Under the pieces are notes generated by a model. It was not told the origin of the DNA. It did not search any database and saw nothing but the letters and a program-made list of their open reading frames with translations. The position numbers were made by a program, and so were the translations under genes. 64,000 nt of DNA from Mobula hypostoma (taxonomy: Eukaryota): NCBI RefSeq assembly GCF_963921235.1, contig NC_086125.1:7874001-7938000 (forward strand), read 5' to 3'. Positions within the stretch are counted from its first letter, which is position 1. Every line of letters begins with the position of its first letter. Positions 12,477-41,748 of this stretch are shown piece by piece.

Positions 12477-12770
12477 CATAAACCTCAATGGAAATGCTAT
12501 CGTTCTTCAGTGGAATTGATGGATAATCCTCAAAATCTGCCGTGCAGGAGACTTCAGTCAGACCGGTCTCTCGTGGTGTCCATGTAGTTGTTCCCCTTAC
12601 TGTGGTGGAATTTGACTGATATGTTGCTGAATTCTGTTGTTCACCGTCGCAAAACCATCGTACTCTCACCTTCTCAGCTGGATAGACGTTTGGCACCTCA
12701 CATGTTAATGTGACCTCCTGATTCACTTCTACAAGGTCTCTGCTGAGGATCCTCGGAGGCTCTGGAAAAG
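12477..12770 (-). CDS. ICAM/VCAM-like gene copy A, exon 4 (Ig domain D3)
   Basis: Acceptor tgtcttgcag|CT and donor TATG|gtgagt; 294 bp, phase 1-1. Encodes (S)FPEPPRIL..TLTCEVPNVYP..WF..VSCTADF..IEVY, an Ig fold. Confidence 0.9.
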
Positions 12771-13995
12771 CTGCAAGACACACAAGAAGTTCACTGCAGT
12801 TCAGCTTGCAGTGGTAAATTCTGATGGACGGAGCTGGAGACTGGCCAGGTCACACATCTGGGGGACCTTTATACCTAATCCACCACTTAATGGTCACGTC
12901 CTTCATTCTTCAGAATGTTTTCCCTAATTTTCAGTTTCTCACCCTGTCTGGTGCTCCAGCCACAAGTAGTGGTACATACAACATCATGCACTTATTAATT
13001 GATCTCAATATCACCTTAATTTGAATCTTGTTTTAGCATCGCAGACGAGACTTAAATTTCCTCTTTCTGACTTTAAGCCAACTTTTACTCCTTAGTCCAA
13101 CTGAGCAGAATATTCCATGAGCCGCTTTCACTCACCACACTTCAATATGGGACTATGTCAAACACAGTGTGAAAATCCTTAAGAGGATATCACTCAATTT
13201 CATCAAAGCCCGCTATTACTTCATCAAAGAACTCAATTTCATCTACAAACCCTGTTGGTTATTTTATAAACTCAACTGTCTTCATGCCCCTTTAAGTATT
13301 CCCATATTAATGTTTCCAACATATTCCCCATCACTGCCACTATAGTGATGGACCAGCAGCTGCTGATGACCTCCTCATGACCTCTGTGCCATTCTCCACC
13401 TCTCCTGCACCTTCCCTAGTCGAGGAGGATTGAGAGATTATGTCAAGCCCTTTTACAGTCTCCATCCTTCTGCAGTTCAGATGCACCCTCTCTGCACCAG
13501 ATGAGTTACAAACTTCTAGCATGGTTATCTTGCTAATAACTTCCCATTCATATTTACCCGCCCATTCTCATTCTTCCCTCTGCTTTCTCTGAGTGTTGGC
13601 ATCATATTCTCCCTTGGTAAAGAGTGAACAAAGTATTCATTCCATATTCCATTCCCTCTGCCTGTAGGCACGGATCACTTTCATGCTTTCTGAGTGATAA
13701 CAGTCCACCTTCACTACGCACACATGATTTACACATCTGCAGAGATTTCAATTCCTTTATTGTGTTAACTGTTACATCTTGTTTTCTGCTCCTAAAGTAA
13801 GTCTCAATCCCACTTCCTCCGTTGGAGTAGCCAGTTCGTGACTACAACCTCTGTTCCATAAAGATCACTCTTGGTTGCACTTTACTAAAATGATCAGAAG
13901 GCAGCATGTTAATACTGTATTTATTTTCAACAGAATATTTCAGTTCAAACTATTCCCAAAATCAGGTGTAAATTTATTGTTAAAATGGAACTCAC

Positions 13996-14307
13996 AGTAA
14001 ATTTGCAGAGTCACAGATGCATTTGCGATTTGTTTGGTTGTGTTAGAGTCCAAGTTCAACTCTGCCAAGCAGGTGTACACCATTCCATCGTCTGAAATAC
14101 TTGCATTGAAATGAAGGACATTCTTCAATGGACCATCTTCTGGGAAACCTGGGTCCTCTGTGGAAATATTTGCTATAGTCTCATTCTCTCTGAGCCAGGT
14201 GAGTACGAGTTTGTTCTTTGGATAGACCTTCAGGCCAGTACACTCTAGCTGATATGGTTTGTTAACTTCCAGCACTTCAGGAGGTGGAACAATGCTTAAG
14301 TTTCGAT
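13996..14307 (-). CDS. Copy A exon 3 (Ig domain D2)
   Basis: Acceptor tctcctttgacag|AT and donor TACT|gtgagt; 312 bp. Encodes LEVNKPYQLECTGLKVYPKNKLVLTWLR..DDGMVYTCLAEL..TLQIY. Confidence 0.9.
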
Positions 14308-14828
14308 CTGTCAAAGGAGAATCATGATTGGCAAAATTCTAAATCAAAAATCAACTCAACAACCAATGTGCCTGTGGATCTTCCTACCATGTGACGTTCC
14401 CAGTCTGATGAATCTCTTCAGTCTGCACCAAAAGAAATCCATTCATCTGTCAGAGCAAACTATGGCTCTGTCACCGTGAGACTCACCTCTGAATGTCCAT
14501 TAACCCACTAATCCTGTGAATCAGCACATTGGTCCAAGACTATGGCGTGTGAAACAGCAACACACGTTTCCTGACCTGAGACTCTCTATAGAATTTCTGT
14601 AAAATTGTCTCTGTTCAATATCAATCCCTGAACATGTCTCAGACTGTGAACTCATTGTGGGGGAGTGAAGTGTAAATCTATTTCCCAGCAGGCAGTGCTC
14701 TACCTCACCTGGTACACAACAGCATCGTTCTGCATAATGTTTTCAAGTGATACATATCTTATGTTGCTGCCTTTCGTCTGGTTATACTCTGCTCTGGGAT
14801 GTATTTGGAACAAAGAGATTTCACTTAC

Positions 14829-15104
14829 TGTACACTGGGACCACCCATTTGTCCTCCTTCACTTCATGGTTTTCAGATCCACAGATTACAGTACAGGGCA
14901 CTGTGAAATCCCATGTCTGGACACTTGGAAATTGGTCTGTAATCCATTTATCACCGCAAGTTCTGTTGGGATTTATCCCTGGTTTATATTCCAGAATCGT
15001 CACTGGGTTGTTACACGTTGTACTGCAGGTCACCTCCAGAGAGTGTCCAAATTCCACCACTGGGGGGTTTGTTTTGATCGATACCTCAAATCCCTTCAGT
15101 TTAT
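14829..15104 (-). CDS. Copy A exon 2 (Ig domain D1, ICAM-type with two CxxxC motifs)
   Basis: Acceptor tctctggcag|AT and donor TACA|gtaagt; 276 bp. Encodes FEVSI..VEFGHSLEVTCSTTCNNP..LEYK..PCTVIC..VPVY. Confidence 0.92.
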
Positions 15105-15189
15105 CTGCCAGAGACACATAGCGAAATGGAATCTGTTCAGTGAAGTGTTGTGTGCAGTTCAATCTCAGCTGAGAATGGATATACTTACC

Positions 15190-15460
15190 GTTCAGACAGT
15201 GAGGGGACGGTTCACCAGACTGATTCCGGAGGTGGCAGGACGGGCGTATGAAGAGAGATTGAGTCACTGTGGCCCACTTACACGAAGGTTTGGAAGATTT
15301 AGTGAAGATTGAATCAAATATATGACATTTTGACAGATCTTGAGAAGTTGGATGCAGGAGATATACTTTCCCTGGCTGAGGAGAGTAAACAAGGGTTTGC
15401 AGATTCGAGATGCAGGTGGATGTGTGGAGAAAAATCTTCACACAATCGTAGTGAAGGGCA
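15190..15460 (+). mobile_element. Old CR1 3' fragment in intron 1, shared with copy B (46260-46530)
   Basis: RRFTRLIP..YEERL remnant at the same distance from the D1 acceptor in both copies. Confidence 0.7.
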
Positions 15461-15849
15461 CCTAGTCTATGCGGTTAGTTTCCTGTCTATTTCCACATAA
15501 TATAAATGTTTGTCACCGTAATTTTGGCCTTTTGTGTTCAAACAGAAGGAATATTTTCAAGTCAGGAAGACATTAAATGTCACTCTGTTCTAACATGGGT
15601 GACTCTGATTTGACTCCTCCCTAAGGTCTGATTTGCAGAGACCTGCCAAATTGCAGTTTCAGGATGGAGGGATCGAGCTGTGGAGAAAAATTTTCAGACA
15701 GATGTAGAGAAAGGTCAAGTCACTGAATGTATTGAAGAAGGGTGGGGTAGAAATTGAGACAACAGTGACACATGGAGTTATTCAGAGAACACGGGGCACC
15801 TGTTGTTCAACACTCAGAATTAAAGATTGTTTTAATATCATTTTCTGTA

Positions 15850-16960
15850 AACAAGTGTAGAGGGGAACAAAGTAGTTGTTAGTTCGGATCCAATGCAGGT
15901 GAAAAAAAACAAGCGATAAAAACACAGTAATAATTAAAACACAATAAATATAAATATGTAAGATAGCTTACTGAATATATATCCATTGATTGTATGTCCA
16001 TAAATTGATTCAGAAGGTGACTGACAAATAATAATAAAGAGGTGGTGGAATTACTGGGTGGAGGTGTTGATCAGCCTTACTGCTTGGGTAAGTATCTGTT
16101 TTTGAGTCTGATAGTCCTGGTGTATGGATGCTACGTAGACTCCTCCCTGATGGGAGTGGGACAAACAGTCCATGAGCAGGGTGGGTGAGATCCTTCAAGA
16201 TGCTACTGGCCCTTTTCTGGCACCTCAGGTGGTGTGGCCGGTGCAATGGACAGCCCTGACTATCTGTTGTAGGGCCTCCCTGTCCGTCATGGTACAGTTT
16301 TTGTACTATGCACTGATAAAGTTTGACAGGATGCTCTCTACTACTCATCTGTAGAATGCTATTAGCCTGGATGTACAAAGCTCAGCTCTCTTTCACCTCC
16401 TCAGAAAGTAGAGGTGTTGATGCGCATTCGTGACTGTGGAGGAAGTGGTTGTGGGACCACGACAGGTTATCAGTGATGAACACTCCCAGGAGTTTGAAAC
16501 CAATCGCAGTTTCCACCACTGTGCCACTGATGTAGTAAGAGGTGTGAGTGGTGTGAGTTCTCCTGAAGTCCATAACTATCTCCTTTGTCTTGTTGACATT
16601 AAGGATGAGTTTATTTTCCTGATACCCGTCCTTGAGTTCTTCGACCCCCTTTCTGTAGGTCATCTCATCGTTGTTGGTGATGAGTCCCACCACTGTTGTG
16701 TTGTCGGTGAACTTGACATTGTGATTGCTCGGGTGTTTGTCCGTGAAGTCATGTGTGAGCAGAGTGTACAGCAATGGGCTCACCCTGGGGGTGGTGGGGT
16801 GGGGGGAGATCGGCTGTGTTGAGGACGATAGTGAAGGAGGAATGTTTGTGCACTCAGACTCTCTGATATCTGTTCGTTAGGAAGTCCAACACCCCGTTGC
16901 ACAGTGGTGTATTTAGACCGAGGTTTGTTCACCACGGTCTGGGGGCCAATGATTTCTATT
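15850..16960 (-). mobile_element. Rex/Babar-type LINE 3' RT fragment
   Basis: ORF 16382-16783 reads LLYTLLTHD..VKFTDNTTVVGLITNNDE..LNVNKTKEIVMDFRR. The C-terminal HPAHGLFVPLPSGR motif is in ORF 16010-16378. Confidence 0.82.
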
Positions 16961-17464
16961 TGCACACAATATGAATGTCTGTCAGTATAAGCATGCCCCC
17001 TTTCACGTTAAAACAGAAGAAATAAATAAATAAATAGGCCGAATTGTATCTGGGATCATTTGAATCTTGGCGGCTGATCCGCAATTTCACGTTCAGACGG
17101 GGAGTCGGAATGGATCACCAAGAATCACGAGGTCTGTAACACATCAGCCCGTGTCCAGTCCTCAATACTGAACATGGGGGCAGAGAGCAGTAACCGTGAA
17201 ACAAAATGTCACTCTTCCCACATCATGGGCAAAACGACATGTGCAATTCACAACGTGTGAAATTGTTTGAAAGCCCGTCCATGAATTGTGTAAATATTCA
17301 ATCGGTGCCCATTTTTCCATTTTTCTCTCTCCAGCCATTCCGCAGTTGAGGCACAAATCAATGTGAAATTTCTCTTTTCGTTCTGCCAAGCCAAAGACAA
17401 CGAAGGAAAACGAGAAACGAGCAACGGTTCGCAGAATAAAGCGCACGTTGTAAAAATGCAGTTA

Positions 17465-17680
17465 CTTACACGAGAATATCTGCAGATGCTGGAAATCCAA
17501 GCAACCTCTTCCTATAGATGCTGCTTGGCCTGCTGCGTTCACCAGCAACTTTGATGTATGTTGCTTGAATTTCCAGCATCTGCAGAATTCCTGTTGTTTG
17601 AGCTCAGCAGGTGAGCCAGCATCTATAGAAAAGAGTCAACAGTCGACGTTTCGGGCCGAGACCCTTCATCAGGACCTGTG
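17465..17680. mobile_element. Penelope-type terminal repeat fragments in inverted arrangement
   Basis: TCTGCAGATGCTGGAAAT..CAAGCAAC at about 17478 and its reverse complement at about 17560. The GACGTTTCGGGCCGAGACCCTTC motif resembles the Penelope end at about 60400-60490. Confidence 0.65.
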
Positions 17681-17779
17681 CTTTGTGTGTGTGGCACAGA
17701 TACTAAGTACAGTTATCGGATTCTCTGTGAGTCCGCGTAAATACGTGTATATTGAATGTTTTTAAATCATTTTACCTAC

Positions 17780-17846
17780 CTGTTACGATAAAGAGTAAAG
17801 TGAAAAAGAAAATTGATTCGCCCAGTGAAATCGGCCTGAAATCCAT
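17780..17846 (-). CDS. Copy A exon 1 (signal peptide MDFRPISLGESIFFFTLLFIVT)
   Basis: ATG at 17846, 67 bp, donor ACAG|gtaggt, phase 1 joining D1 in frame. It has a hydrophobic core and is homologous in length, sequence and donor to copy B exon 1. Confidence 0.82.
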
Positions 17847-23763: not shown

Positions 23764-25856
23764 GAATAAAGAGAAAGAAGATAGTAAAATTATAACTGCC
23801 TGCATCAGACATTCAACTGGCAGAAATCTGCAGGGTGTTCAAACAGCATCAGTGGGAGAAAAGGAAATGTTGTTTTGAGTGGAAGCCCTTCATCATGACA
23901 GAGTGGGAGAAGTGAGATGGTCCCTCAGGATGAGTGGTGAGACAGACCAAAGTGATCAGTGAGCTGACAAGGTGGAAGGTGATAGATCACTGTTCCAGGT
24001 CGAGGAGGAAAAAGGCTTGGAGTGCAGTTAGACAATGGCAGGTGAATTAGATGGAGGCAGAAAAAGAGAGGGGAAAAATTGAGGGGCAGGTGGAGCAAGG
24101 TGGGAGGAGGGGATTGTGGAGACAGGTACAGTAGGTAGATAAGCAAGAACACAAAGGGCCACCAGTACTGGTATCTTATAAGCAAGAAGTTGAGATTGGG
24201 ATCTATTAGTAGGGAGGTGGATGGCAGATAGAGGACCAGATGGGGAAGAGAGGCTGAGTCTGTGGGCCAACTGTGTGTGGATGGAACAAGGATGGTGAAG
24301 GGAATATAGATAGATCATGGGGGTTGATGGAAAGGGTGGGGCAATGGTTTCTGCAATTGAGGGAAATGGGACAAAAATGGGTAGAGCAGAGGAATATTGG
24401 AAGGGGAAGGGTGAGGGTTCAATGGTTTAATGGTTCCATTTAATATCAGAATGCTTACAACATACAACCTGAAATTCTTGCTCTCCAAAGACATCCTTGA
24501 AACAGAAGAAAACCCCTAAAGAATGAAAGACATAAAAGAAACTAAGAACCCCAAAGCCCCCTGCCTCCCACTAGATAGATCTAACAACTTGATCAAGACT
24601 CATTGTATCATTACAATAATGCTTTTGCCAGCTCTTTTTAGAGGAATCGAGTTCTGTGCTATTCCTGGTACTCGCACCAGGAAGGAGATTGAAACGGATC
24701 ATGAAGACCTTAACATAATTAACGTCACTAAGGAATGAATGGAGAGAGTGAGGTGACTCAAAACTGGCCGGTCCCTCTCGCCTGACGGTCTTTATCCAGA
24801 GAAGTTTTAAGAATTGACTGCAGAGATAATGTTATATTTTTACGATATCCCCAAATCCCCGCGAATCTGGAGCTGCCTCAGTAAACTGAAAGGTAGAAAA
24901 TATAACATTGCAATTCGGTCAGAAATAGAGAGAATATATTGAACTAATCTGCAGTCAAACTGACATCAGGTTTTTGCTACTTGCTTGAATCAGGATGTGT
25001 TAATAGAGCTCAAAGTAAATCAGGAATGTCTATGATCCAAACTTCATTCCCATTGTTGTGCAGGACAGTTGCAATCTCAGTGGCTTTCACTACTGTTCCA
25101 GTTGTCAAGTGATGATCTAGTATCCGTGGGAGTCATTGTTACACACTGGTTCCGACTGCCCCCTCACCCTCCCAAAGCAGAGCATTCTTGGCAATGATTA
25201 TATTAGATTAGATTATGAGGACACTCAGTCCTTGCTCATTGTCATTAAGAAATGCATGCATTAAAAAATGATACAATGTTCCTCCAGAACGATATCACAG
25301 AAACACAGGACAGACCAAGACTAAAACTGACAAAGCCACATAATTATAACATATAGTTACAACAGTGCAAAGCAATACCATAATTTGATAAAAAGCAGAC
25401 CATGGACACGGTAGAAAGAAAAAGTCTCAAGTCCCGGTAGCCCCATCATCTCATGCAGACGGTAGAAGGGAGAAACTCTCCCTGCCATGAACCTCCAACC
25501 ACCGCAAACTTGCCGATGCATTGGAAACACCCGACCGCAGCCGACTGTGAGTCCGTCCGAAAACTCCAACCAGCCCTCCAACACCGAGCACCGAGCGCCA
25601 ACCTCTGCCGAGTGCTTTGACCAATGAGCAGGTAAAATAGAGCTACATATTAACACTGCAGCCAGAAGCTTTCCTTGATAAGAATAAGATCTACAGCATC
25701 ATTAGAACATCTCCCCACAATCAGCATGTTATGCCATTCATATTGAATATTCTTGTCTTAAACACTTGTGCATTACATTACATTTCCAGCATTGTTTTTC
25801 TAAATTAGACTCCCAGCTCATTGCCTTTGGTGTCTGCATTTCTTGCAGATGGTCAG

Positions 25857-25933
25857 TTATAGAGTGATGAGGATTCCAGCAATTACCAATGGTAAAACTA
25901 CTGGAATTATCCATGTTGGTAACCCGGATGAAT
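25857..25933 (-). CDS. Copy B terminal exon: hydrophobic anchor segment (D)SSGLPTWIIPVVLPLVIAGILITL*
   Basis: Acceptor tgattgttttatag|AT, phase 1 and compatible with the D4 donor. TAA at 25859-25857. Linking it to D4 across a 15.5-kb intron is an inference; no other Ig exon was found in between. Confidence 0.75.
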
Positions 25934-26429
25934 CTATAAAACAATCACAAAGGCAGTTGTACAAGTCATTGACAATTGAATTTATATAATCATTGACATT
26001 GATTATAAAACTATTGATTATTCTCAAAACACATATTTTTCCCTGATTCTCATATTTGCCACTCAATCCTCGTGCCTGATATTTATTCCCACATCTTCAT
26101 GTTCAAAATTGACTTACATCTATGTAATGAATTTCACAATATCTTAGTGTTTTATGGCTAATGAATAGATTTCTGAAGAGTATCTGTTGCGAGAAATTCA
26201 GAAATTAATAAGCATACTAAAACCACCCAGAAACAACAGGACCATGATGAGATAATCATTTTAGAATGCTGTAGAGGCTTTCCTACGTTTATGGGATAAC
26301 ATCTTTCCCACAGGAATAATCTTTTCTTCAGTACAAAATTCTTGGTTGGAAATCTGCAGCCTTCAGTTCAGTGTCTTTGCAATACTGGTCAAACTCACTA
26401 TGTGAAATGACTGAGACAGCTGAGCCAGT

Positions 26430-27707
26430 ACCTCATTCCATTTTCATAAATTTTCCATTCACTTCTGTGTAAGCCATATTGCTGTCTGTTGTTTGTTTAC
26501 ACACTGTAAATCTCAAGGCTACATAGTCCTGTCTCACTCTCATCACTCTCACATTTTTCATCAACAACACGCAGACTGGTGCTGCTTTTGGAACTAAAAC
26601 TTGACTTTTTATCTCTTTCTCTTTCCTGTGCAATCCATTTATTTTTGTCCACCTGACATGCTCTTTGCATTTGACCTAATTGTTGCATTTTCTGCGAGTT
26701 CCGCCTTTACATCTGGATTTGTTTGGTGTATATGAGCCGCTGGCACAATGGTAACATAACTTATTTGACTAGGTTGGTTTATGTATAGACGCTGCAAAGT
26801 TATTCATACTCACTTTCCTTCCTGAGCGCAACTCAATTGCATCACTGTCTGCAGTTTCCATTAAAACAGCCATTTCAACTGCACTTTCAAATACAGGTTG
26901 TGCTTCAGTTAGGAGCAGTTTTAGAATGTTTTCTTTTGAGATTCTACAAATGAAACCATCTCCCAGTGCACCATTAAGCAAATTACCAAACTGACAATGC
27001 ACAGACAATCTCTTCAATTCAGCCACATCTGCTGAAAAGGACTCCCCTTCTTTTTGATTCCACTTCTGAAACCCAAATCATTCTACAATAAACAATAGCT
27101 TTGGTTTCAAGTGTTCCTGTATTACTTTGACAACATCAGGAAGGGTCAGTTTGGCTGGTTTAGTTGGAGCAGTAAACTTTGAAGCAAACTGTATGCCTTG
27201 AAACTCAAAGCATTTAACAAAATTGGTACTCATTTCTCATTGGCTATTTCATCTATTTCAAAATACTGTTACAATAGCTCAGTATACATGAGCCAATTAC
27301 CCGTGGTGTAATCCAACAAGTCGATCTTTCCGAAATAGCCAGCCATTTCTGATTTTTAATGATTATTATCATCCAGTACTCACACTTTATGAACCCTGAA
27401 TTTTTCCATTAATGGCCTTTTTTCAAACTCGACATCTCTGCGTGTGTTGGCTGCATTCTCTTACTTGCTGTCTTTTTTTTAGTTCAAACATCTTATTGTG
27501 CTTTAACAGGTCAAAGGCCACCTCATGTTCATTTTAAAGCACCTTGATGCCAATGTTATATTTTGTAACTTCAAAACGTTAAAGTAATTCAAAGGCAGAC
27601 ACTGGAGTCTGAAATGCAGTTCTCACTTCGAGTTTACTGTTAAGCGTGGTGCACCCATGTGGATCTGATGGGATGAGGAGCCTGCCTATCAACCCAGGCT
27701 TGTAACA
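26430..27707 (-). mobile_element. Gypsy fragment: LTR, PBS and decayed gag
   Basis: LTR ends ..TATAACA at 27554, followed by the PBS-like TTGGCATCAAGG. The gag ATG at 27346 gives MAGYFGKID; ORF 26769-27026 reads AELKRLSVHCQFG..LLLTEA..AVEMAVLMETA. Confidence 0.75.
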
Positions 27708-27989
27708 GGAACTTAGCCCAGTGCAGTGGTCAGTAACTGGAGTTGGCAAGTGTGCTGGGAGGTTATGCGCAGGTCAGAATTGAAGAGTTTGTTTTGTGTT
27801 GAAGTCGGCAGTAAGCCTGTGGAACCGTTGCCAACCACAGGATACTGATGTTCTCATATAGTCATAGTGGAGAAACCTCCCCCCATCGGCAGAAAGAGAC
27901 AGTTTCAGATCTGCGAACGCTTGGATACCTGGCTTGTGTACAAGAGCATTCAAACCATTAAGGAAAGTTCCCACTAGGCAACTCAGCTC

Positions 27990-30900
27990 TGAAAGACGGT
28001 TTTGAAACCCAAGACAAAAACATTGTGGAAGTAATGGTTCAGAAATGAGAGGGAGTTACACCCAAGGTGCAGGACACAGGAAACTGGGTGACAGTCAGGA
28101 AGGGAAGTGCAGAGTACCCCTGTGGCCATCCCCCTCAGCAACCGGTATATCACTTTGGATACTGTCAGGTGGGTATTCCCTAACAGATGAAAGTCACAGT
28201 GGTCGGGACTCTGGCATTGAGTCTGCCTCTGGGACTCAGAAGGGAAGGGGAGAAGAAGCACACTGTGGTGACAGAGGATTCATTAGTTAGGGAAACGGAT
28301 GGGAGGATCTGTGGGCAAGAACAAGATTCCCAGAGGGTATGTTGCCTCCTGGGTGCCAAGGTCTGGGATATCTCAGATCAAGTCCTCAGCATTCTTAAGT
28401 GGCAGGGTGAACAGCAAGAAGTCGTGGTCCAGGTAGGTACCAATGCCATGGGTAGGGCGAGGAACAAGTTCTGCATCGGGAGTTCAGGGAGTTAGGTATT
28501 AAGTTAAAAGACAGGATCTTCAGAGTTGTGATCTCATGATTGCTATCCATGGCATGTGCCAATGAGGCCAGAACTAGGAAGATTATACAGTTAATATGTA
28601 GCTAAGGAGTTGGTGTAGGAAGGAGGGCATAGAGTTTTCGATCATTGGGCTCTCTTCATAGAAAATAGAACATAGAACAGTACAGCACAGTACAGGCCCT
28701 TCGGCACACAATGTTCTGCCAACCCTTAAACCCTGCCTCCCATATAAACCCCCACCTTAAATACCTCCATATACCTGTCTAGTAGTCTCTTAAACTTCAC
28801 TAGTGTATCTGCCTCCACCACTGACTCAGGCAGTGCATTCCACGCACCAACCACTCTCTGAGTAAAAAAAACTTCCTCTAATATCCCCCTTGAACTTCCC
28901 ACTCCTTACCTTAAAGCCATGTCCTCTTGTATTGAGCAGTGGTGCCCTGGGGAAGAGGCGCTGGCTATCCACTCTATCTATTCCTCTTATTATCTTGTAC
29001 ACCTCTATCATGTCTCCTCTCATCCTCCTTCTCTCCAAAGAGTAAAGCCCTAGCTCCCTAAATCTCTGATCATAATGCATACTCTCTAAACCAGGCAGCA
29101 TCCTGGTAAATCTCTTCTGTACCCTTTCCAATGTTTCCACATCCTTCCTATAGTGAGGCAACCAGAAATGGACGCAGTACTCCAAGTGTAGCCTAACCAG
29201 AGTTTTATAGAGCTGCATCATTACCCCGTGTCTCTTAAACTCTATCCCTTGACTTATGAAAGCTAACACTCCATAAGTTTTCTTAACTATCCTATCTATC
29301 TGTGAGACAACTTTCAGGGATCTGTGGACATGTACCCCCAGATCCCTCTGCTCCTCTACACTTCCAAGTATCTGCCATTTACTTTGTATTCTGCCTTGGA
29401 GTTTGTCCTTCCAAAGTGTACCACCTCACACTTCTCCAGGTTGAACTCCATCTGCCACTTCTCAGCCCATTTCTGCATCCTATCAATGTCTCGCTGCGAT
29501 CTTCGACAATCCTCTACACTATCCACAACACCACCAACCTTTGTGTCGCCGTAAACTTGCCAACCCACCCTTCTACCCCCTCATCCAGGTCGTTAATAAA
29601 AATAACAAAAAGTAGAGGTCCCAGAACCGATCCTTGTGGGACACCATTAGTCACAACCCTCCAATCCGAATATACTCCCTCCACCACGACCCTCTGCCTT
29701 CTGCAGGCAAGCCAATTCTGAATCCACCTGGCCAAACATCCCTGGATCCCGTGCCTTCTGACTTTCTGAATAAGCCTACCATGTGGAACCTTGTCAAATG
29801 CCTTACTAAAATCCATATAGATCACATCTACAGCACTACCCTCATCTGTATGCCTGGCCACCTCCTCAAAGAACTTTATCAGGCTTGTTAAGCACAATCT
29901 GCCCTTCACAAAGCCATGCTGACTGTCCCTGATCAGACCATGATTCTCTAAATGCCCATAGATCCTACCTCTAAGAATCTTTTCCTACAGCTTTCCCACC
30001 ACAGACATATGGCTCACTGGTCTATAATTACCCAGACTATCGCTACTACCTTTTTTGAACAAGGGGACAACATTAGCCTCCCTCCAATCCTCCAGTACCA
30101 TTCCCGTGGACAATGAGGACATTAAGATCCTAGCCAGAGACTCAGCAATCTCTTCCCTCGCCTCATGGAGCAGCCTGGGGAATATTCCGTCGGGCCCCGG
30201 GGACTTATCCGTCCTAATGTATTTTAACAACTCCAACACCTCTTCTACCTTAATATCAACATGCTCCAGAACATCAACCTCACTCATATTGTCCTCACTG
30301 TCATCAAGTTCCCTCTCATTGGTGAATACCAAAGAGAAGTATTCATTGAGGACCTCGCTCACTTCCATAGCCTCCAGGCACATCTTCCCACCTTTATCTC
30401 TAATCGGTCCTACCTTCACTCCTGTCATCCTTTTGTTCCTCACATAATTGAAGCATGCCTTGGGGCTTTCCTTTACCCTACTCGCCAAGGCTTCTCATGC
30501 CCCCTTCTTGCTCTTCTCAGCCCCTTCTTAAGCTTCTTTCTTGCTACCCTATATTCCTCAATAGACCCATCTGATCCTTGCTTCCTAAACCTCATGTATG
30601 CTGCCTTCTTCCACCTGACTAGATTCTCCACCTCGCTTGTCACCCATGGTTCCTTCACCCTACCATTCTTTATCTTCCTCACCGGGACAAATTTATCCAT
30701 AACCTCCTGCAAGAGATCCCTAAACATCAACCACATGTCCTTCGTACATTTCCCTGCAAAAACATCATCCCAATTCACACCCGCAAGTTCTAGCCTCATA
30801 ATTTGCCCTTCCCCAATTAAAAATTTTCCTGTCCTCTCTGATTGTATCCTGTTCCGTGATAATGTTCAAGGCCAGGGACCGGTGGTCACTGTCCCCCAGA

Positions 30901-33890
30901 TGCTCACCCACTGAGAGATCTGTGACCTGATCTGGTTTGTTACTTCATACTAGATCTAGTATGATATTCCCCCTACTTGGCCTGTCACTATACTTTGATA
31001 GGAATTCGTCCTGGACACACTTAACAAACTCTGGCCCATCTAAACCATTGGAACTAATGAGGTGTCAATCAATATTAGGGAAGTTAAAGTCACTGGTGAT
31101 AACAACCCTGTTATTTTTTGCACCTTTCCAAAATCTGCCTCCCAATCTGTTCCTGGGTATCTCTGCTGCTACCAGGGGGCCTATAGAATACTCCCAATAG
31201 AGTAACTGCTCCCTTCTTGTTCCTGAATTCTACCCATACTGACTCAAAAGAGGATCCTGCTACATTACCCACCATTTCTGGAGCTGTAATATTATCCCTG
31301 ACCAGTATTGCCACCCCTCCTCCCCTTTCTCTCCCCCCCCCCCATCCCTTTTAAAGCACTGAAATCCAGGAATATTGAGAATCCAATCCTGCCCTGGTGC
31401 CAGACAAGTCTCTGTAATGACCACTACGTCATAATTCCAAGTATGTATCCAAGCTCTCAGTTCATCACCTTTGTTCCTGATGCTTCTTGCATTGAAGTAC
31501 CTGCACTTTAGCCCTTCTACCCTACTACCTTTACACCCTTTATTCTGTTTCTCTTTCCTCAAAGCCTCTCTATATGTTAGATCTGGCTTTACTCCATGCA
31601 CTATACTTGCAGTTCTCGCATGACCTTTATCCTCCTCCACCTCACTATCTGCTCTAACACTCTGGTTCCCCTCCCCCTGAAAATCTAGTTTAAACCCCCT
31701 GGACCAGCACCAGCAAACCTTCCTGCAAGGATGTTAGTCCCCCTCCAGTTCAGGTGCAACCCGTCCTGTCGGAACAGGTCCCACCTTCCCTGGAACAAGG
31801 CCCAATTGTCCAGAATCGTGAAGCCCTCCTCCTGCACCATCTTCTTAGCCACGTATTTAGCTGCATTATCTTCCTATTTCTAGCCTCACTAGCACGTGGC
31901 ACGGGTAGCAATCCTGAGATTGCAACCCTGGAGGTCCTGTCCTTCAACTTTGCACCTAACTCCCTAAATTCTCCTTGCAGGACCTCCTCCTCCTTCCTAC
32001 CCACATCATTGGTCCCTGCATGGACCACGACATCTGGCTGCTCACCCTCCCTCTTGAGAATACTGAGAACTCGATCCGAGATATCGCAGACCATCCGGGA
32101 TTCTCGATCTCTTCCACAGAACCTCTTGTCTGTCCCCCTAACTGTCGAATTCCCTATCACTACTGCTCTCCTCTTTTCACTCCTTCCCTTCTGAGCTGAG
32201 GGTCCAGTCTCGGTGTCAGAGGCGCAACCACTGCAACTTGTCCCTGGTAGGTCATCCCCACCAACAGTATCCAAAACGGTGTACTTATTATTGATGGGAA
32301 TGGTCACAGAGGTGCTCTGCTCATTCTGTCTATTCCCCTTCCCTCTCCTGACAGTCACCCAGCTACCTGTCTCCTGACTTTTAAGGGTGACTATCTCCCT
32401 GTAACTCCTGTTTATTTCTGCCTCTGCCTCACGAATGATCCGAAGTTCATCCAGCTCCAGCTCCAGTTCCCTAACTCGGTTTGTCAGGAGCTGCAGTTGG
32501 ATGCACCTTTCCCAGGAGTAGTCATCAGGGACAATTGTGCTCACCCTGACTTCCCACATCCTGCAAATGGAGCACTCAACTGCCCTGACTGCTGCCTCCA
32601 TTACCCATTCCTAAGTTAATTAGATTAATTAAAGGAACTTACCCGGCCTTACCTCACTGGGAACAAGCTCTTCCTCAGCCTCTGCTCGCTGAAGCCTCTA
32701 GTGCCAAAGCCTTCCTACTCTGTCTCCCACTACTCCGTTGCCTGCTCCATTAATTTGCACAGTTTTTAAACTCTCCCACTGTCTCATGGGCCAGCTTTCA
32801 TGCGCTTGTGCAGTCGTGCCCCGTTCAAGCTGCCGAAGAAATGACCCAATCCAGGGAAGGTGGGAGCTGTACAGAACGGATGAACTGGAAGGGCACTAAT
32901 ATCCTAGCGGGAAGGATTGCTGGTGTTGCACAAGGAGGTTTAAACTAGAGTTGCAGGGGAATAGGAATGAGAGTGCCAGAAAGGTTAGTGGAGAGATTGT
33001 GGAGGCAGATGTTGGTAAGACCTCAGACAAAGCTAGGAATTAAAAGTTTGAACATGGTGTGACTAATGTCCACAGCTGCATATATTTCAATGCAAGAGGT
33101 ATCATAGGAAAGGTGGATAACAGTCCTAAAGATGAGGTAGCTGGTATACAGAGGCAATGTGTAGAGAGGAGAGGCTGTTGATAGGGCAAAATTGCAATAA
33201 ACAGGATGAGTTGCAATGTAAAAGGCAGACAAAATCAAAAAGGGTGAATACAGGACTGAAGGTGTTGTATTTGAATGTGTGGAGTATACAGAATAAGGTA
33301 GATGAACTTGTAGCACAGTTGCAGGTTGGCAGGTATGATATTGTAGGCATCACTGAATCATGGCTGAAACATTATAGCTGGGAGCTTAATGTCCAAGGAT
33401 ACACATTGTATTGAAAGGGCAGAAAGTAAGTTAGAGGGGATGGTGTTTCTCTGCTGGTAAAAAATGAAATCAAATCATTAGAGAGAGGTGACATAGGGTC
33501 AGAAGGTGTTGAATCATTGTGGAGAGAGCTAAGGAACTGCAAGGGTAAATAGACCCTTATGGGAATTGTATACAGACCCCCAAACAGTAGTAAGGATGTG
33601 GCCTACAAATTGCAACAGGAGATAGAAAATGGATCCCAAATGGTCAATATTACTATAGTCAAGGGGAACTTAAATATGCAAATAGATTGGGAAAATTAGG
33701 TTAGTGCTGGATCCCAAGAGGGGTTAGCTTCTGGTTGAGGGGATCAGCTATTCTAGATTGGGTGTTGTGCAATGAACCAGAATTGATGAGACAGTTTAAG
33801 GTAAAAGAACCTTTAGGGACAAGTGATCATAATATGATTGAATTCACCCTGAGAATTTGAGAAGGAGTAGCTAAAGTCAGATGTATCAAT
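27990..33890 (+). mobile_element. Old CR1 (ORF1 esterase plus APE remnants) split by the minus-strand CR1 at 28658-32850
   Basis: Esterase remnant (DSLVR..VVVQVGTN) at 28000-28657 ends GATCATTGGGCTCTCTTC and resumes CAGGGAAGGTGGGAGCTG at about 32852. LYLNVWSIQNKVDEL is in ORF 33157-33414. Confidence 0.75.
28658..32850 (-). mobile_element. Near full-length CR1 (esterase ORF1 plus broken APE-RT ORF2)
   Basis: ORF 31750-32601 has a zinc finger (CSIC..C), a coiled coil and an SGNH esterase (GNSTVRG, VHAGTND). ORF2 pieces at 31111-31640, 30473-30799, 29985-30488, 29514-29909 and 28826-29269. The 3' tail (reads ATAGAAC on +) is at about 28658-28680. Confidence 0.9.
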
Positions 33891-33959
33891 TAAAACTTAG
33901 CTAGTCTATATAATATTCTGAATAGTTAAATTAAATAAGTTGTGAGAAAAAGTAGTGAG

Positions 33960-36900
33960 GGTTATTCAGTAGTGAGATTTGGAGCAAGAAGGCTGCGAGT
34001 GAATGGCTGATTTTTTGGAGTGAAGGGAGTTTTTTACTACTCGGGGTAAAAGAGAGGCGAGACTGCGCAGGCGCATGATGTCAGACAGTAGAGCATGAAA
34101 GGTTTAAAAAGAAGACCGCTATATCCAGCGGGCAGCGGAGTGAGAGGCAGCAGAGTGATAGGGCTTTGGCTCGATGGGCTTAGGCAGTACTTGGACGAGG
34201 CGAGGTAGGCTTACCGGTGTTATTTGTGGAAAGGAGGAAGTATGTGTATGAGGCCAGTTTTCTGTGCCCGGTGTCAGACATGGGAGATCCTGGAGTCTCC
34301 CAGCCTCCTGAACAGCCATATCTGCTCCAGGTGTGTTGAGCTGCAGCTCCTGAGGGACTGAGTTAGGGAACTGTAGATGCCGCTCGATGACCTTCCCCTG
34401 GTCAGGAAGAGTGAGGAGGTGATAGATAGGAGTTATAGGCAAGTGGTCACACCGGGGCCACGGGAAACAGACAAGTGGGTCACAGTCAGGAGAGGGAAGG
34501 GGAGGAGTTAGGTACCAGAGAGTACACCTGTGGCTGTACCCCTTGACAATAAGTACTCCTGTTTGAATACTGTTGGGGGGGGGACAGCCTACCTGGGGGA
34601 AAAAACAGTGGCCGTGCCTATGGCACAGAGTCTGGCCCTGTGGCTCAGAAGGGTAGGGAAAGGAAGAGGATGGCAGTAGTGATAGGGGACTCTATAGTTA
34701 GGGGGTCAGACAGATGATTCTGTGGATGCAGGAAAGAAACTTGGATGGTAGTTTGCCTCCCAGGTGCCAGGATCCGGGACGTTTCAGATCATGTCCAAGG
34801 TATCCTGCAGTGTGAGGGAGAACAGCCAGAGGTTGTGGTACATATTGGTACTAATGACATAGGTAGGAAAAGGGAAGAGGTCCTGAAAAAAGACTACAGG
34901 GAGTTAGGAAGGAAGTTGAGAAGCAGGACCACAAAGGTAATAATCTCGGGATTACTGCCTGTGCCACGGGACAGTGAGAATAGGAATAGAATGAGGTGGA
35001 GGATAAATGCGTGGCTGAGGGATTGGAGCAGGGGGCAGGGATTCAGATTTCTGGATCATTGGGACCGCTTTCGGGGCAAGAGTGACCTGTACAAAAAGGA
35101 CGGATTGCACTTGAATCCCAGGGGAACCAATACCCTGGCGGGGAGGTTTGCTAAGGCTATTGGGGAGAGTTTAAACCAGAATTGTTGGGGGGGTGGGAAC
35201 CGAAATGAAGAGATTGGGGAAGAGGAGGTTGGCTCACAAATTGAGAAAGCTTGTAGACAGTGCGAGAAGGAGGATAGGTAGGTGGTAGAGAAGGGAGGCG
35301 CTCAGACCAAAAGTTTGAGATGTGTCTATTTTAATGCAAGGAGTGTTGTGAACAAAGCGGATGAGCTTCGAGCATGGATCAGTACTTGGACATGTGCTGT
35401 GGTGGCCATTACAGAGACTTGGATGGCTCAGAGACGGGAATGGTTACTTCAAGTGCTGGGTTTTAGATGTTTCAGAAAGGACAGGGAGGGAGGCAAAAGA
35501 GGTGGGGGTGTGACACTGTTGATCAGAGATAGTGTCACGGCTGCAGAAAAGGTGTACACCATGGAGAGATTGTCTATGGAATCTCTGTAGGTGAAGGTTA
35601 GGAACAGGAAGGGGTCAATAACTTTACTGGGTGTTTTTTTATAGGCCGCCCAATAGTAACAGGGATATAGAGGAGCAGATAGGGAAACAGATCCTGGAAA
35701 GGTGTAATAATAACAGAGTTGTCGTGATGGGAGATATTAATTTCCCAAATATTGATTGGCATCTCCCTAGAGCAAGGGGTTTAGATGGGGTGGAGTTTGT
35801 TAGGTGTGTTCAGGAAGTTTTCTTGACACAATATGTAGATAAGCTTACAAGAGGAGAGGCTGTACTTGATTTGGTATTGGGAAATGAACCTGGTCAGGTG
35901 TCATATCTCTCAGTGGGAGAGCATTTTGGAGATAGTGATCACAATTCTATCTCCTTTACAATAGCATTGGAGAGAGATAGGAACAGACAAGTTAGAAAAA
36001 CATTTAATTGGAGTAAGGGGAGTTATAAGGCTATCAGGCAGGAAATTGGAAGCTTGAATTGGGAACAGATGTTCTCAGGGAAAAGTACGGAAGAAATGTG
36101 GCAAATGTTCAGGGAATATTTGTGTGGAATTCTGCATAGGTACGTTCCAATGAGACAGGGAAGATATGGTAGGGTACAGAAACCGTGGTGTACAAAGGCT
36201 GTTATAAATCTAGTCAAGAAGAAAAGAAAAGCTTACAAAACGTTCAGAGAGCTAGGTAATGTTAGAGAGCTAGAAGATTATAAGGCTAATAGGAAGGAGC
36301 TTAAGAAGGAAATTAGGAGAGCCAGAAGGGGCCATGAGCAGGCCTTGGCGGGCAGGATTAAGGAAAACCCCAAGACATTCTACAAGTATGTAAAGAGCGA
36401 GAGGATAGGACGTGAAAGATTAGGACCTATCAAGTGTGACAGTGGGAAAGTGTGTACGGAACTGGAGGAAATAGCAGAGGTACTTAATGAATACTTTACT
36501 TCAGTATTCACTATGGACTCGTATGGCCAGATTTGGGAACAGCTTTTTTCCAACTGTGATAAGACTGCTGAACGGATCCTGACCCGGATCTGGGCCATAC
36601 CGTCCAAATACCCAGATCTGCATCTCGGTTTTTTTGCACTACCTTACTTTCCAATTTTCTATTTATGATTTATAATTTAAATTTTTAATATTTACTATCG
36701 ATTTGTAATCCAGGGAGCAGGAAGCACAGAATCAAATATCGCTATGATGATTGCACGTTCTAGTATCAATTGTTTGGCGACAATAAAGTATAAGGTAAAG
36801 TAAGGTAAAAGGATCTTGGTAATTGTAGTGATGACTTTCAGCAGACTGAAAAGCTTGAGCGTGTAGATATTAAGAAAGAGGATGTGCTGGGGCTTTTGGA

Positions 36901-38468
36901 AAACATCAAGTTGGATAAGTCGCTGGGACTGGATGAGATGTACCCCAGGCTATTGTGGGAGGCAAGGGAGAAGATTGCTGAGCCTCTGGCGATGATGATG
37001 CAAAGATCAATGAGGATGGGAGAAGTTCTGGAGGATTGGAGGGTTGCAGATGTTGTCCCTTTATTCAAGGAAGGGAGTAGAGATAGCCCAGGAAATTATA
37101 GGCCAGTGAGTCTTACCTCAGTGATTGGTATGTTGATGGCGAAGATTCTGAGAGGCAGGATTTATGAACATTTGTGGAGGTATAATATGATTAGGAGTAG
37201 TTAGCATGGCTTTGTCAAGGGCAGGTCATGCCTTATGAGCCTGATTGAATTTTTGAGGGTGTGACTAAACACATTGATGAAGGAAGAGCAGTAGATGTAG
37301 TACATATGGATTTCAGCAAGGCATTTGATAAGGTATCCCATGCAAGGCTTATTGAGAAAGTAAGGAGGCATGGGATCCAAGGTGACGTTGCTTTGTGGAT
37401 CCAGAACTGGCTTGCCTACAGAAGGCAAAGAGTGGTTGTAGACGGGTGACATTCTGCATGGAGGTCAGTGACCAGTGGTGTGCCTCAGGGATCTGTTCTG
37501 GGACCCTTACTCTTCGTGATTTTTATAACTGACCTGGATGAGGAAGTGGAGGGATGGGTTAGTAAGTTTACTGATGACACAAAGGTTGGGGGTGTTGTGG
37601 ATAGTGTGGAGGGCTGTCAGAGGTTACAGTGGGACATTGATTGGATGGAAAACTGGGCTGAGAAGTGGCAGATGGATTTCAACCCAGATAAGTGTGAAGT
37701 GGTTCATTTTGGTAGGTCGAATATGATGGCAGAATATAGTATTAATGGTAAGACTCTTGGCAGTGTGGAGGATCAGAGGGATCTTGAGGTCCGAGTCCAT
37801 AGGGCTCTCAAAGCAGCTGCGCAGGTTGACTCTGTGGTTAAGAAGGCATAGGGTGTATTGGCCTTCATCAATTGTGGAATTTAGGAGCCGAGAGGTAATG
37901 TTGCAGCTATATAGGACCCTGGTCAGATCACACTTGGAGTACTGTGCTCAGTTCTGGTCGCCTCACTACAGGAAGGATGTGGAAGCCATAGAAAGGGTGC
38001 AATGGAGATTTACAAGGATGTTGCCTGGATTGGGGAGCATGCCTTATGAGAATAGGTTGAGTGAATTTGACCTTTTCTCCTTGGAGTGACAGAGGATGAG
38101 AGGTGACCTGATAGAGGTGTATAAGATGATGAGAGGCATTGATCCTGTGGATAGTCAGAGGCTTTTTCCCAGGGCTGAAATGGTTGCCACAAGAAGACAC
38201 AGGTTTAAGGTGCTGGGGAGTAGGTACAGAGGAGATGTCAGGGGTAAGTTTTTTACTCAGAGAGCGGTGAGTGCGTGGAATGGGCTGCCGGCAATGGTGG
38301 TGGAGGCTGATGAGATAGGGTCTTTTAAGAGACTTTTAGATGGGTACATAGAGCTTAGAAATTACTCGGCTTACCTATAGCTCTCTATTTTTCTAAGGTA
38401 GGGACATGTTCGGCACAACTTTGTGGGCCTAAGGGCCTTTATTGTGCTGTAGGGTTTCTATGTTTCTT
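33960..38468 (+). mobile_element. Near full-length CR1, decayed
   Basis: Esterase ORF1 at 34745-35281 (VHIGTND, DGLHLN). APE and RT pieces at 35282-38380 (YFNARS, GVPQGSVLGPLLF, FTDDTK). CTATGTTTCT tail at the end. Confidence 0.9.
36518..36807 (+). mobile_element. Rex/Babar-type 3' fragment inserted into the CR1 ORF2
   Basis: NSFFPTVIRLLN-like remnant, AATAAA and a (GTAAA)-like tail. The CR1 reads TTCACTATGGA|..|AAAGGAT across the insert, as in the uninterrupted copy near 52490. Confidence 0.75.
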
Positions 38469-40945: not shown

Positions 40946-41032
40946 AGACAGACAGACACAGACACACACACACACACACACACACACACCAACACACACC
41001 ACACACACACACACACACCACACACCACACAC
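40946..41032. repeat. Compound (GACA)/(CA)n microsatellite
   Basis: Seen directly in the sequence. Confidence 0.95.
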
Positions 41033-41472
41033 TTCCCCATTCCTATTTCATTTAAGTTCAAGTTTAATTGTCATTCAACCATCCCCATGAATACAGCCAA
41101 ATGAAAGACCATTCCTCCGTGGCCAGGGTGCAAAACACAATGGAAACAGTCACGCACAGCACATATAATTACGATAGCAGGAAAACAGTTAAATATTTTA
41201 AGTAATATTAGAAATATAGATAGCCCAAATCCGAGTGTTGTAGCCCATTGTCTTTTTAAAGACTGAACCTCATGTCTGGAACATTGTTAACTCCTGTAGT
41301 CCTGTGCTTTCTTCCCCACTATCAACGCATATCCAGAATTATTAATTAAACCTTTCTGTTTAAAAAAAAAATTGATATATACCACAAAGATAAAAAAAAA
41401 TAAAATGAAAATAACTAGCAACAGATAACCTCACACATCACTACCCGGCAGTACCAGTGTGATGTCACTCAC

Positions 41473-41748
41473 CATGGACAGCGGGAGTGGTGGACTGTCG
41501 TTTAACAATGGTGTTGGAGCGATGGTGAAGTGTCAGCTCGGCCTCACAGGTGAACTGCTGTCCATTCAGCTCTGCTCGTGGATTCACAGTGTGGTAGATA
41601 GTCAGCCCAGTACTGGCTGACCTGTTCACTAATATCTCACTTCCCTTCTTCAGTCTGAGTTGAAGTTCCCCTGAGACGTTAAACACACTGCAGGTAATAT
41701 TCACCCGAGTGCCCTCAGTGGTCATTTGGATTTCAGGGTTGGAGAAAA
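41473..41748 (-). CDS. Copy B exon 5 (Ig domain D4)
   Basis: Acceptor ttctgttgttacag|TT and donor CATG|gtgagt; 276 bp. Encodes (V)FSNPEI..VNITCSV..LRLKKGSEIL..NGQQFTCEAELTL..IVKRQSTTPAVH, resembling the ICAM pattern NGRSFSCSATLEV..HKNQT. Confidence 0.88.

What the first reader, a model, noticed from the sequence alone, without database searches (positions are those of the whole stretch)
25818..25933. Stop codon at the end of the membrane segment: candidate transmembrane-to-GPI conversion of an ICAM-like protein
Copy B ends ..AVH-DSSG-LPTW-IIPVVLPLVIAGILITL-TAA. The same frame continues LTICKKCRHQRQ-TGA, which looks like the rest of a TM helix plus a basic, Cys-containing juxtamembrane tail, so the TAA looks like a derived nonsense change. 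The truncated C-terminus fits a GPI signal: small residues (D/S/S/G) about 22-25 aa from the end, a short spacer, a 17-aa hydrophobic end and no charged tail. The stop is in the presumed last exon, so it would escape NMD, and all upstream exons are open. Known precedents are GPI-anchored CEACAMs derived by mutation of the TM exon, FcgammaRIIIb, and a GPI isoform of mouse VCAM-1. A tail-less ICAM could be a non-signalling or sheddable decoy beside TM paralogs. Alternatives are early pseudogenisation (D4 also has an odd Pro in STTPAVH), read-through, or a base-call error.
Basis: partly seen in the sequence, partly recalled or inferred. Interest (0 to 1): 0.8.

Follow-up and report, generated by a model that had tools for sequence, protein, structure and literature searches.

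The report
Early stop in ray ICAM-like anchor
In a devil ray, one of two neighbouring cell-adhesion (ICAM-like) genes has a one-letter change that ends the protein inside its membrane anchor; the gene is still transcribed, and the shortened end could now be swapped for a lipid (GPI) anchor, but this has not been tested.

Summary
On the minus strand, 25933-25818 is the last exon of copy B of two tandem ICAM-like genes. Copy B's exons are 100% identical to Mobula hypostoma XP_062891714.1.

The exon joins in phase after Ig domain 4. It codes DSSGLPT, then 18 hydrophobic residues, then TAA (25859-25857). Twelve more in-frame codons (ending KKCRHQRQ) and a TGA follow.

RNA-like contigs from two runs of this species carry the TAA. 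They stop exactly at the acceptor and continue at least 1.9 kb as 3'UTR, while the adjacent intron is uncovered. A related species reads TCA (Ser) at this codon. The orthologues of two stingrays and the paralogue encode an unbroken helix plus a short basic tail.

So the stop is real, derived, expressed and in the last exon.

The fate of the tail-less protein is not shown. Its end fits the loose rules for a GPI signal, as in CEACAMs and MICA*008, although the spacer is short. A young loss of function is nearly as likely.

The public gene model skips this exon and fuses copy B to copy A, which is probably an artefact. No GPI predictor or bench test could be run.

The parts
48829..48895 (-). Copy B exon 1: ATG and signal peptide (22 aa, MDYTPISAGGYV...), donor GTAGGT, phase 1
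   Evidence: Scan. Borders checked. Identical to the start of XP_062891714.1 (P0143) and near-identical to the orthologues P0110 and P0109.
45898..46173 (-). Copy B Ig domain 1 exon (ICAM_N type)
   Evidence: Pfam ICAM_N, E 5.7e-8. Matches PDB ICAM-2 and ICAM-3 D1, with the LE(T/Y) Glu aligned. AG/GT borders.
43846..44157 (-). Copy B Ig domain 2 exon
   Evidence: Weak Ig_3 and C1-set matches. Open, with AG/GT borders.
42416..42709 (-). Copy B Ig domain 3 exon (ICAM1_3_5_D2 type)
   Evidence: Pfam E 5.4e-11. RNA-like runs X5-X8 hold about the exon share of the words of 41440-42760.
41473..41748 (-). Copy B Ig domain 4 exon, ending ...STTPAVH, donor G|GTGAGT
25934..41472 (-). 15.5-kb last intron holding two LINE copies (about 28.8-32.6 kb on the minus strand, 34.7-38.4 kb on the plus strand)
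   Evidence: Reverse-transcriptase-type ORFs. RNA depth is about 0 just upstream of the exon, at 26010-26277.
25860..25933 (-). Coding part of the last exon: (D)SSGLPT followed by 18 hydrophobic residues
   Evidence: Contigs of four runs from three species end at 25932-25934, the acceptor.
25857..25859 (-). Derived stop codon TAA; a related species reads TCA (Ser) here
   Evidence: no difference in X5 or X25 (same species). In X18 (organism B), 25858 T>G on the plus strand gives TCA on the minus strand.
25818..25856 (-). Former coding remainder (LTICKKCRHQRQ plus TGA): the last 4-5 helix residues and the 8-residue basic tail, now 3'UTR
   Evidence: Aligns with the helix end and tail of P0143 (copy A), P0110, P0109 and P0002.
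24000..25817 (-). 3'UTR, running on to about 23600 by the length of the contigs, with a very abundant SINE-like repeat at about 25200-25600
   Evidence: Contigs of X5, X25, X18 and X14 tile 24000-25934, and three of them run 360-400 nt past 24000.
12477..17846 (-). Copy A (paralogue), 5' part: exon 1 17780-17846, D1 14829-15104, D2 13996-14307, D3 12477-12770. Its D4 and intact TM exon lie beyond the window start
   Evidence: blastn and tblastn. Borders checked. Copy A D3 is 100% identical to residues of P0143, which then ends with an intact TM plus KKCRRRRL. The gene model is 65 kb long.

Best explanation
Shown: 25933-25818 (minus strand) is the transcribed last exon of copy B of a tandem pair of four-Ig ICAM-like genes of a devil ray (Mobula hypostoma by sequence identity). 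A single C-to-A change (TCA to TAA) in this lineage ends the frame inside the membrane helix. It removes the last 4-5 helix residues and the 8-residue basic tail (KKCRHQRQ). Because the stop lies in the last exon, the mRNA is not expected to be degraded by NMD, and it is in fact present. Inferred: the 433-aa product enters the ER through its signal peptide. It ends in 18 marginally hydrophobic residues containing two prolines, with no cytosolic anchor. That end is most likely handled as a GPI-attachment signal: cleaved at a small residue of the stalk (D/S/S/G, or the S of STT) and replaced by a GPI anchor. The result would be a lipid-anchored, tail-less ICAM-like molecule that cannot bind the cortical cytoskeleton and can be shed, sitting beside the transmembrane paralogue. 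Whether this form is maintained by selection is open.
For: The exon and stop read as stated. The exon is used: RNA-like contigs from X5 and X25 (same species), X18 and X14 (two other species) end at the AG acceptor and continue at least 1.9 kb, with zero depth in the intron at 26010-26277. Runs hold 100% of the words of 25560-25940 and about the exon share of 41440-42760. TAA is present in RNA with no second allele at depth 111. The change is derived: organism B reads TCA, and the two other listed exon differences are synonymous. The orthologues XP_072925487.1 and XP_059848257.1 and the paralogue's exon encode an unbroken helix plus KKYKCQRQ or KKCRRRRL, with Ala aligned to the stop. This suggests the path GCA>TCA>TAA. 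Upstream exons are intact with canonical splice sites. Paralogue dN/dS is 0.46-0.59. The rules are as stated in PMC10491789, which also cites Galian 2012 on the need for marginal hydrophobicity. Precedents are stop codons in CEACAM TM exons that give GPI signals, arisen several times independently (PMC2832619), and the frameshifted MICA*008 allele that is rescued by a GPI anchor (PMC10316631).
Against: No GPI predictor and no experiment could be run. With omega in DSSG the spacer is only 3-4 residues against the usual 8-12; the STT site has a less favoured Thr at omega+2. The stop may be recent, so intact exons and continued expression do not prove function. Shortening a GPI-type hydrophobic tail can send a protein to ERAD (abstract of PMC12410294). 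The D4-to-25933 junction was inferred, not read. The public model XP_062891714.1 joins D4 to copy A D3 instead. Fixation in the species is unknown, since the data may come from a single individual.
Confidence: 0.4

Rival explanations
1. Young loss of function. The truncated hydrophobic end is neither a stable membrane anchor nor a good GPI signal. The protein is retained and degraded, or leaks out in small amounts. Copy B would then be at the first step of pseudogenisation in a birth-and-death gene family.
For: The change is specific to this lineage and absent in a species about 3.3% diverged. The family is tandemly duplicated and variable. The spacer is short for a GPI signal. Deleting part of a GPI signal leads to ERAD in PrP (abstract of PMC12410294). 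Paralogue dN/dS of about 0.5 shows only moderate constraint.
Against: There is no second lesion in 1299 nt, and all splice sites are canonical. The mRNA is present at contig depth comparable to its UTR in several runs. Truncated TM segments with nearby small residues do become GPI-anchored in known cases.
Confidence: 0.3
2. Tail-less transmembrane protein. The 18 hydrophobic residues still span the bilayer, so the protein stays a type I membrane protein without a cytoplasmic tail. It would keep adhesion but lose the link to the cytoskeleton.
For: The 18-residue stretch has a Kyte-Doolittle mean of 2.6, as hydrophobic per residue as the intact helices of relatives. The ancestral tail was only 8 residues, so little is lost.
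Against: The segment has two prolines, a summed insertion energy near zero and no positive-inside flank. From general knowledge, a hydrophobic stretch at the very C-terminus leaves the ribosome only after termination. It therefore cannot act as a co-translational stop-transfer signal.
Confidence: 0.2
3. The exon is a minor or by-product end. The main product is the 636-aa fusion of the public model (copy B exon 1 to D4 joined to copy A D3, D4 and TM), so the stop has little consequence.
For: XP_062891714.1 is identical to copy B through D4 and then to copy A D3. No other gene is called inside its 65-kb range. Six-Ig relatives with a repeated D3-D4 pair exist (P0001, P0144). The X5 contig reaches only 30 nt into the upstream exon, as expected if that exon end has more than one continuation.
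Against: The fusion would have to ignore a used terminal exon with a long UTR and skip the good acceptors of copy A D1 and D2. Copy A has its own intact exon 1, D1 and D2. The 25933 exon is present in RNA-like runs of three species. The orthologues in two stingrays are four-Ig proteins ending with this exon. Unspliced pre-mRNA would equally explain the contig break.
Confidence: 0.1

Closest known systems
GPI-anchored CEACAMs (CEACAM5-8 of primates, a pig CEACAM) derived from the CEACAM1 TM exon
   Same: An IgSF adhesion molecule in a tandem, fast-evolving family. A stop codon introduced into the TM exon leaves a short hydrophobic end without a tail, and TM paralogues are kept alongside (PMC2832619).
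   Different: In CEACAMs the GPI anchor is shown experimentally, and extra mutations or deletions accompany the stop. Here a single substitution is seen, the anchor type is untested, and the family is different (ICAM_N-type D1) in a cartilaginous fish.
MICA*008 (human NKG2D ligand allele)
   Same: A natural mutation in the TM-coding segment truncates the helix and removes the tail. The product is rescued to the surface by a GPI anchor and is shed differently (PMC10316631).
   Different: MICA*008 arises from a frameshift with a new short sequence and uses a slow, non-standard GPI route. Here a nonsense codon keeps the original residues.
Mammalian ICAM-1/-2/-3/-5
   Same: D1 is of ICAM_N type with the CSTxC motif, and a Glu aligns with the integrin-binding Glu. 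D3 matches ICAM1_3_5_D2. Exons are one per Ig domain in phase 1, with TM and tail in one last exon. The ancestral tail is short and basic.
   Different: Orthology to any mammalian ICAM was not tested. NCBI names the relatives variously as ICAM-1/-2/-4/-5-like or VCAM-1-like. As far as I know, no mammalian ICAM is GPI-anchored.
GPI-linked three-domain isoform of mouse VCAM-1; Fc gamma RIIIb (from memory, not checked here)
   Same: IgSF adhesion or receptor proteins that exist in both TM and GPI forms.
   Different: The VCAM-1 form arises by alternative splicing to a separate exon. In Fc gamma RIIIb a Ser/Phe difference near the omega site decides the anchor type, not a stop inside the helix.

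Membership tests
ICAM family (IgSF) | N-terminal ICAM_N-type Ig domain | tested here: met
   PF03921, E 5.7e-8, 32.8 bits against a cut-off of 21. Also matches ICAM-2 (1zxq) and ICAM-3 (1t0p) D1.
ICAM family (IgSF) | Acidic integrin-binding residue (the Glu of the I/L-E-T motif) in D1 | tested here: inconclusive
   The Glu of TLEYK aligns with the LET Glu of ICAM-3 and ICAM-5 in the HMMER alignments. Binding itself was not tested.
ICAM family (IgSF) | Type I membrane protein with a TM helix and a short basic cytoplasmic tail | tested here: not met
   The feature is met in the orthologues and in the paralogue. In this copy the TAA ends the frame inside the helix, so there is no tail.
ICAM family (IgSF) | Orthology with a named mammalian ICAM (tree, synteny) | not tested
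   Only automatic names were seen.
GPI-anchored proteins | N-terminal signal peptide | tested here: inconclusive
   Exon 1 has a hydrophobic core and is conserved in the orthologues. No SignalP run was possible.
GPI-anchored proteins | C-terminal stretch of 15-20 hydrophobic residues with no cytosolic tail | tested here: met
   18 residues run up to the stop. The rule is from PMC10491789.
GPI-anchored proteins | Small omega residue, omega+1 not Pro, small omega+2 | tested here: met
   DSS, SSG and STT all qualify by the rule.
GPI-anchored proteins | Hydrophilic spacer of about 8-12 residues between omega+2 and the hydrophobic stretch | tested here: inconclusive
   The spacer is 3-4 residues for DSS or SSG, and 11 for STT, which has Thr at omega+2.
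GPI-anchored proteins | Release by PI-PLC, or chemical proof of the anchor | not testable with these tools
   This is a bench test.
TM-to-GPI conversion by a mutation in the TM exon (CEACAM / MICA*008 kind) | Homologous intact TM exon in relatives, and a derived stop inside the helix | tested here: met
   Alignment. TCA in the related species.
Pseudogene | Further disabling lesions or loss of transcription | tested here: not met
   All exons are open with canonical splice sites. RNA-like contigs are present.

The most novel reading that the evidence does not exclude
A one-base change in the devil-ray lineage turned a transmembrane ICAM-like adhesion molecule into a GPI-anchored one. It is kept by selection as a non-signalling, sheddable partner or decoy beside its transmembrane paralogue. 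This would be the first GPI-anchored member of the ICAM kind, and an independent repeat in cartilaginous fish of the route known from primate CEACAMs.
Probability: 0.22. Interest if true: 0.5.

Novelty: new member of a known kind. Interest (0 to 1): 0.35.

Why it matters
If the GPI reading holds, it adds a third, very distant example after CEACAMs and MICA*008 of how a single mutation in a TM exon changes the anchoring, and so the signalling and shedding, of an immune adhesion molecule. It would also show that this route is open in cartilaginous fish.

There is a practical point too. The public gene model of this locus (XP_062891714.1) most likely fuses two neighbouring genes. It leaves out a transcribed last exon and three intact exons of the paralogue. 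Anyone counting or comparing ICAM/VCAM-like genes in rays should know this.

If the stop is simply a young loss of function, the finding is an ordinary event in a birth-and-death gene family.

Tried and rejected
- **Base-call error: rejected.** The TAA is present in RNA-like contigs of two runs, and all sampled words are held by DNA runs.
- **Heterozygosity: no sign.** There was no second contig at depth 111 in X5. Contigs can drop rare variants.
- **Splicing inside the exon that would remove the stop: rejected.** Contigs are continuous over 25469-25934, and no joint is listed there.
- **Read-through: set aside.** The context is TAA-CTG. From general knowledge UAA is the tightest stop, and no known read-through motif follows. 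It was not tested.
- **Other candidate TM or Ig exons, and copy A's D4/TM, in the window:** none found by blastn or tblastn.
- **Orthologous DNA for a codon-level alignment:** none was returned for P0110, P0109 or P0143, because the files are too large.
- **Searching the exon's ORF for fragments from other species' contigs:** no candidates.
- **The codon in organism D (X14):** its middle base equals this genome's. However, 18 of its 20 differences were not printed, so the codon is unknown.
- **The letters that run on beyond 25934:** not printed, so the upstream exon was not read directly.
- **Galian 2012 (PMC3351287):** not held.
- **Literature search on shark or ray ICAMs:** nothing specific found.

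Full report
**What is there**

The feature lies on the minus strand. After the acceptor ttttatAG, the exon starts at 25933 with AT. Together with the G left over from the previous exon, this gives Asp. It then reads SSGLPT, 18 hydrophobic residues (WIIPVVLPLVIAGILITL) and TAA at 25859-25857. The same frame continues LTICKKCRHQRQ and ends at TGA 25820-25818.

**The gene**

The window holds two tandem copies of a four-Ig gene on the minus strand.

| Exon | Copy B | Copy A |
|---|---|---|
| Exon 1 (signal peptide) | 48895-48829 | 17846-17780 |
| D1 | 46173-45898 | 15104-14829 |
| D2 | 44157-43846 | 14307-13996 |
| D3 | 42709-42416 | 12770-12477 |
| D4 | 41748-41473 | beyond the window start |
| Last exon (TM) | 25933-25818 | beyond the window start |

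- All exons are open, in phase 1, with AG/GT borders.
- D1 is an ICAM_N domain (E 5.7e-8) and D3 an ICAM1_3_5_D2 domain (E 5.4e-11).
- D1 also matches the solved D1 of ICAM-2 and ICAM-3. Its Glu aligns with the LET Glu of ICAM-3 and ICAM-5.
- Spliced through the 25933 exon, copy B gives 1299 nt, or 433 aa.
- The last intron is 15.5 kb and holds two LINE copies.

**Whose genome, and what the public annotation does**

A profile-free search with the D3 exon, followed by two searches with the hits, found a family of shark and ray proteins. NCBI names them automatically as ICAM-1/-2/-4/-5-like or VCAM-1-like.

XP_062891714.1 of Mobula hypostoma (P0143, 636 aa) is identical to copy B over all 408 residues from the start through D4. 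It does not continue with the 25933 exon. It goes on with copy A's D3 (100% identical to 12768-12478), then a D4 and a TM exon that lie outside the window. The model spans 65 kb, and no other gene is called inside it.

So the window is M. hypostoma or something indistinguishable from it. Earlier notes of the scan also say devil ray. The public model skips this exon and copy A's exon 1, D1 and D2, and so fuses the two copies.

**Is the exon used?**

Yes. RNA-like runs of the same species hold about the exon share (0.38-0.42) of the words of 41440-42760. They hold all words of 25560-25940.

Laid on 24000-28000, the contigs behave as follows:
- Contigs of X5 and X25 lie on 25469/25511-25934 without a single difference. 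They stop at the acceptor, with 29 and 10 further letters that do not fit the intron.
- Other contigs tile the stretch down to 24000 and run on about 370 nt further.
- Depth is about zero at 26010-26277.
- Contigs from two other species (X18, X14) end at the same place.

This is the picture of a terminal exon with a 3'UTR of about 2 kb or more.

The one extra matching base at 25934 is the G expected from the end of D4. Only 20-50 letters of the upstream exon are attached. This fits a contig break either at the junction or where D4 becomes identical among paralogues.

The letters themselves were not printed, so the D4 join is inferred. The inference rests on phase, position and the orthologues. 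XP_072925487.1 (Hemitrygon akajei, 447 aa) and XP_059848257.1 (Hypanus sabinus, 457 aa) share copy B's signal peptide and go straight from D4 (...AVH / ...TVP) into DSPGL(P/L)KWIIPVV....

**Is the stop derived?**

Yes.
- In organism B (X18, 12 differences in 364 nt), position 25858 is G on the plus strand, which gives TCA (Ser) on the coding strand. The two other listed differences in the exon are synonymous (Leu13, Pro14).
- The two stingray orthologues, copy A's exon and the H. sabinus paralogue P0002 all encode an unbroken helix of 21-22 residues. A short basic tail follows (KKYKCQRQ, KKCRRRRL, KRRTQQRA).
- The stop aligns with an Ala of that helix. The simplest path is therefore GCA > TCA > TAA.
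- The residues after the TAA (LTIC KKCRHQRQ) are the homologous helix end and tail.
- In organism D the middle base equals this genome's, but its other differences were not listed. Its codon stays unknown.

**What the truncation does: shown and inferred**

Shown:
- The stop lies in the last exon.
- The mRNA is present.
- No other lesion exists in the CDS.
- The protein would end with 18 hydrophobic residues and no tail.

Inferred: the fate of that end. By the usual description of the signal (PMC10491789), it has these properties:
- candidate omega triplets DSS, SSG and STT;
- no Pro at omega+1;
- an 18-residue hydrophobic end;
- two prolines in that end;

Marginal hydrophobicity is what efficient GPI addition is reported to need (Galian 2012, cited in PMC10491789; I could not read that paper).

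The weak point is the spacer. It is 3-4 residues if omega is in DSSG, against 8-12 as a rule. It is 11 only with the less favoured STT site.

Nature has taken this route before. Stop codons in CEACAM TM exons created GPI signals several times (PMC2832619). The truncated MICA*008 allele is rescued by a GPI anchor (PMC10316631). Against this, shortening a GPI-type tail can lead to ERAD (abstract of PMC12410294).

My weighting is as follows:

| Reading | Weight |
|---|---|
| GPI anchoring | 0.4 |
| Degraded or secreted product (young loss of function) | 0.3 |
| Tail-less TM protein | 0.2 |
| Exon is only a minor end beside the fused form | 0.1 |

**Constraint**

Between the two copies, dN/dS is 0.46-0.59 for D1-D3. 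This is moderate constraint, typical of immune IgSF genes. It says nothing about the time since the stop arose.

At about 1.6% change on this lineage, one to three further disabling changes would be expected in a neutral 1.3-kb CDS if the stop were as old as the split from organism B. None is seen. That fits either a recent stop or continued constraint. This is my own rough estimate, not a test.

**Comparison and novelty**

In kind, this is the known way of making a tail-less or GPI-anchored IgSF molecule from a TM one. What would be new is the family (ICAM-like) and the lineage (a ray).

The firm results are a verified, derived, expressed premature stop and a probable fusion artefact in the public annotation. 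The GPI claim remains a reasonable but untested hypothesis.

Noticed in passing
window 12477-48895, extending about 16 kb beyond the window start: The public model XP_062891714.1 (636 aa, 65 kb) joins copy B exon 1 to D4 with copy A D3, D4 and TM. It leaves the transcribed 25933 exon and copy A's intact exon 1, D1 and D2 unannotated. This is probably a fusion artefact of two tandem genes.
   Followed up: partly
window about 25200-25600: A SINE-like repeat inside the 3'UTR attracts RNA-contig depth of 18,000-80,000 in all runs and species, with many variant contigs and internal joints. It appears to be a very abundant transcribed repeat family.
   Followed up: no
window 20900-21330: A minisatellite of about 12-13 perfect copies of a roughly 30-bp GC-rich unit (open in several frames, for example ...HALAPAASEA...) lies between the two gene copies. 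The local GC content is 0.58.
   Followed up: no
window 28800-32600 (minus strand) and 34700-38400 (plus strand): Two long LINE copies with endonuclease and reverse-transcriptase ORFs sit in opposite orientation inside the 15.5-kb last intron of copy B. The orthologous genes of two stingrays span only 13-19 kb in total.
   Followed up: no
window 9775-11836: Copy A's D4 would be expected about 0.5 kb after its D3. Retroelement ORFs lie there instead, and D4 and the TM exon lie beyond the window start.
   Followed up: partly
window 59971-60078 (minus strand): A weak D1-like fragment (tblastn E 0.002) with an in-frame stop. It may be a decayed remnant of a further family member upstream of copy B.
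   Followed up: no
P0115 (Pristis pectinata, 472 aa), C-terminus: Another family member, as annotated, ends in a hydrophobic stretch followed by a single Arg. C-terminal anchors seem variable across this family (long tails, 8-residue tails, almost none). This could also be an annotation effect.
   Followed up: no
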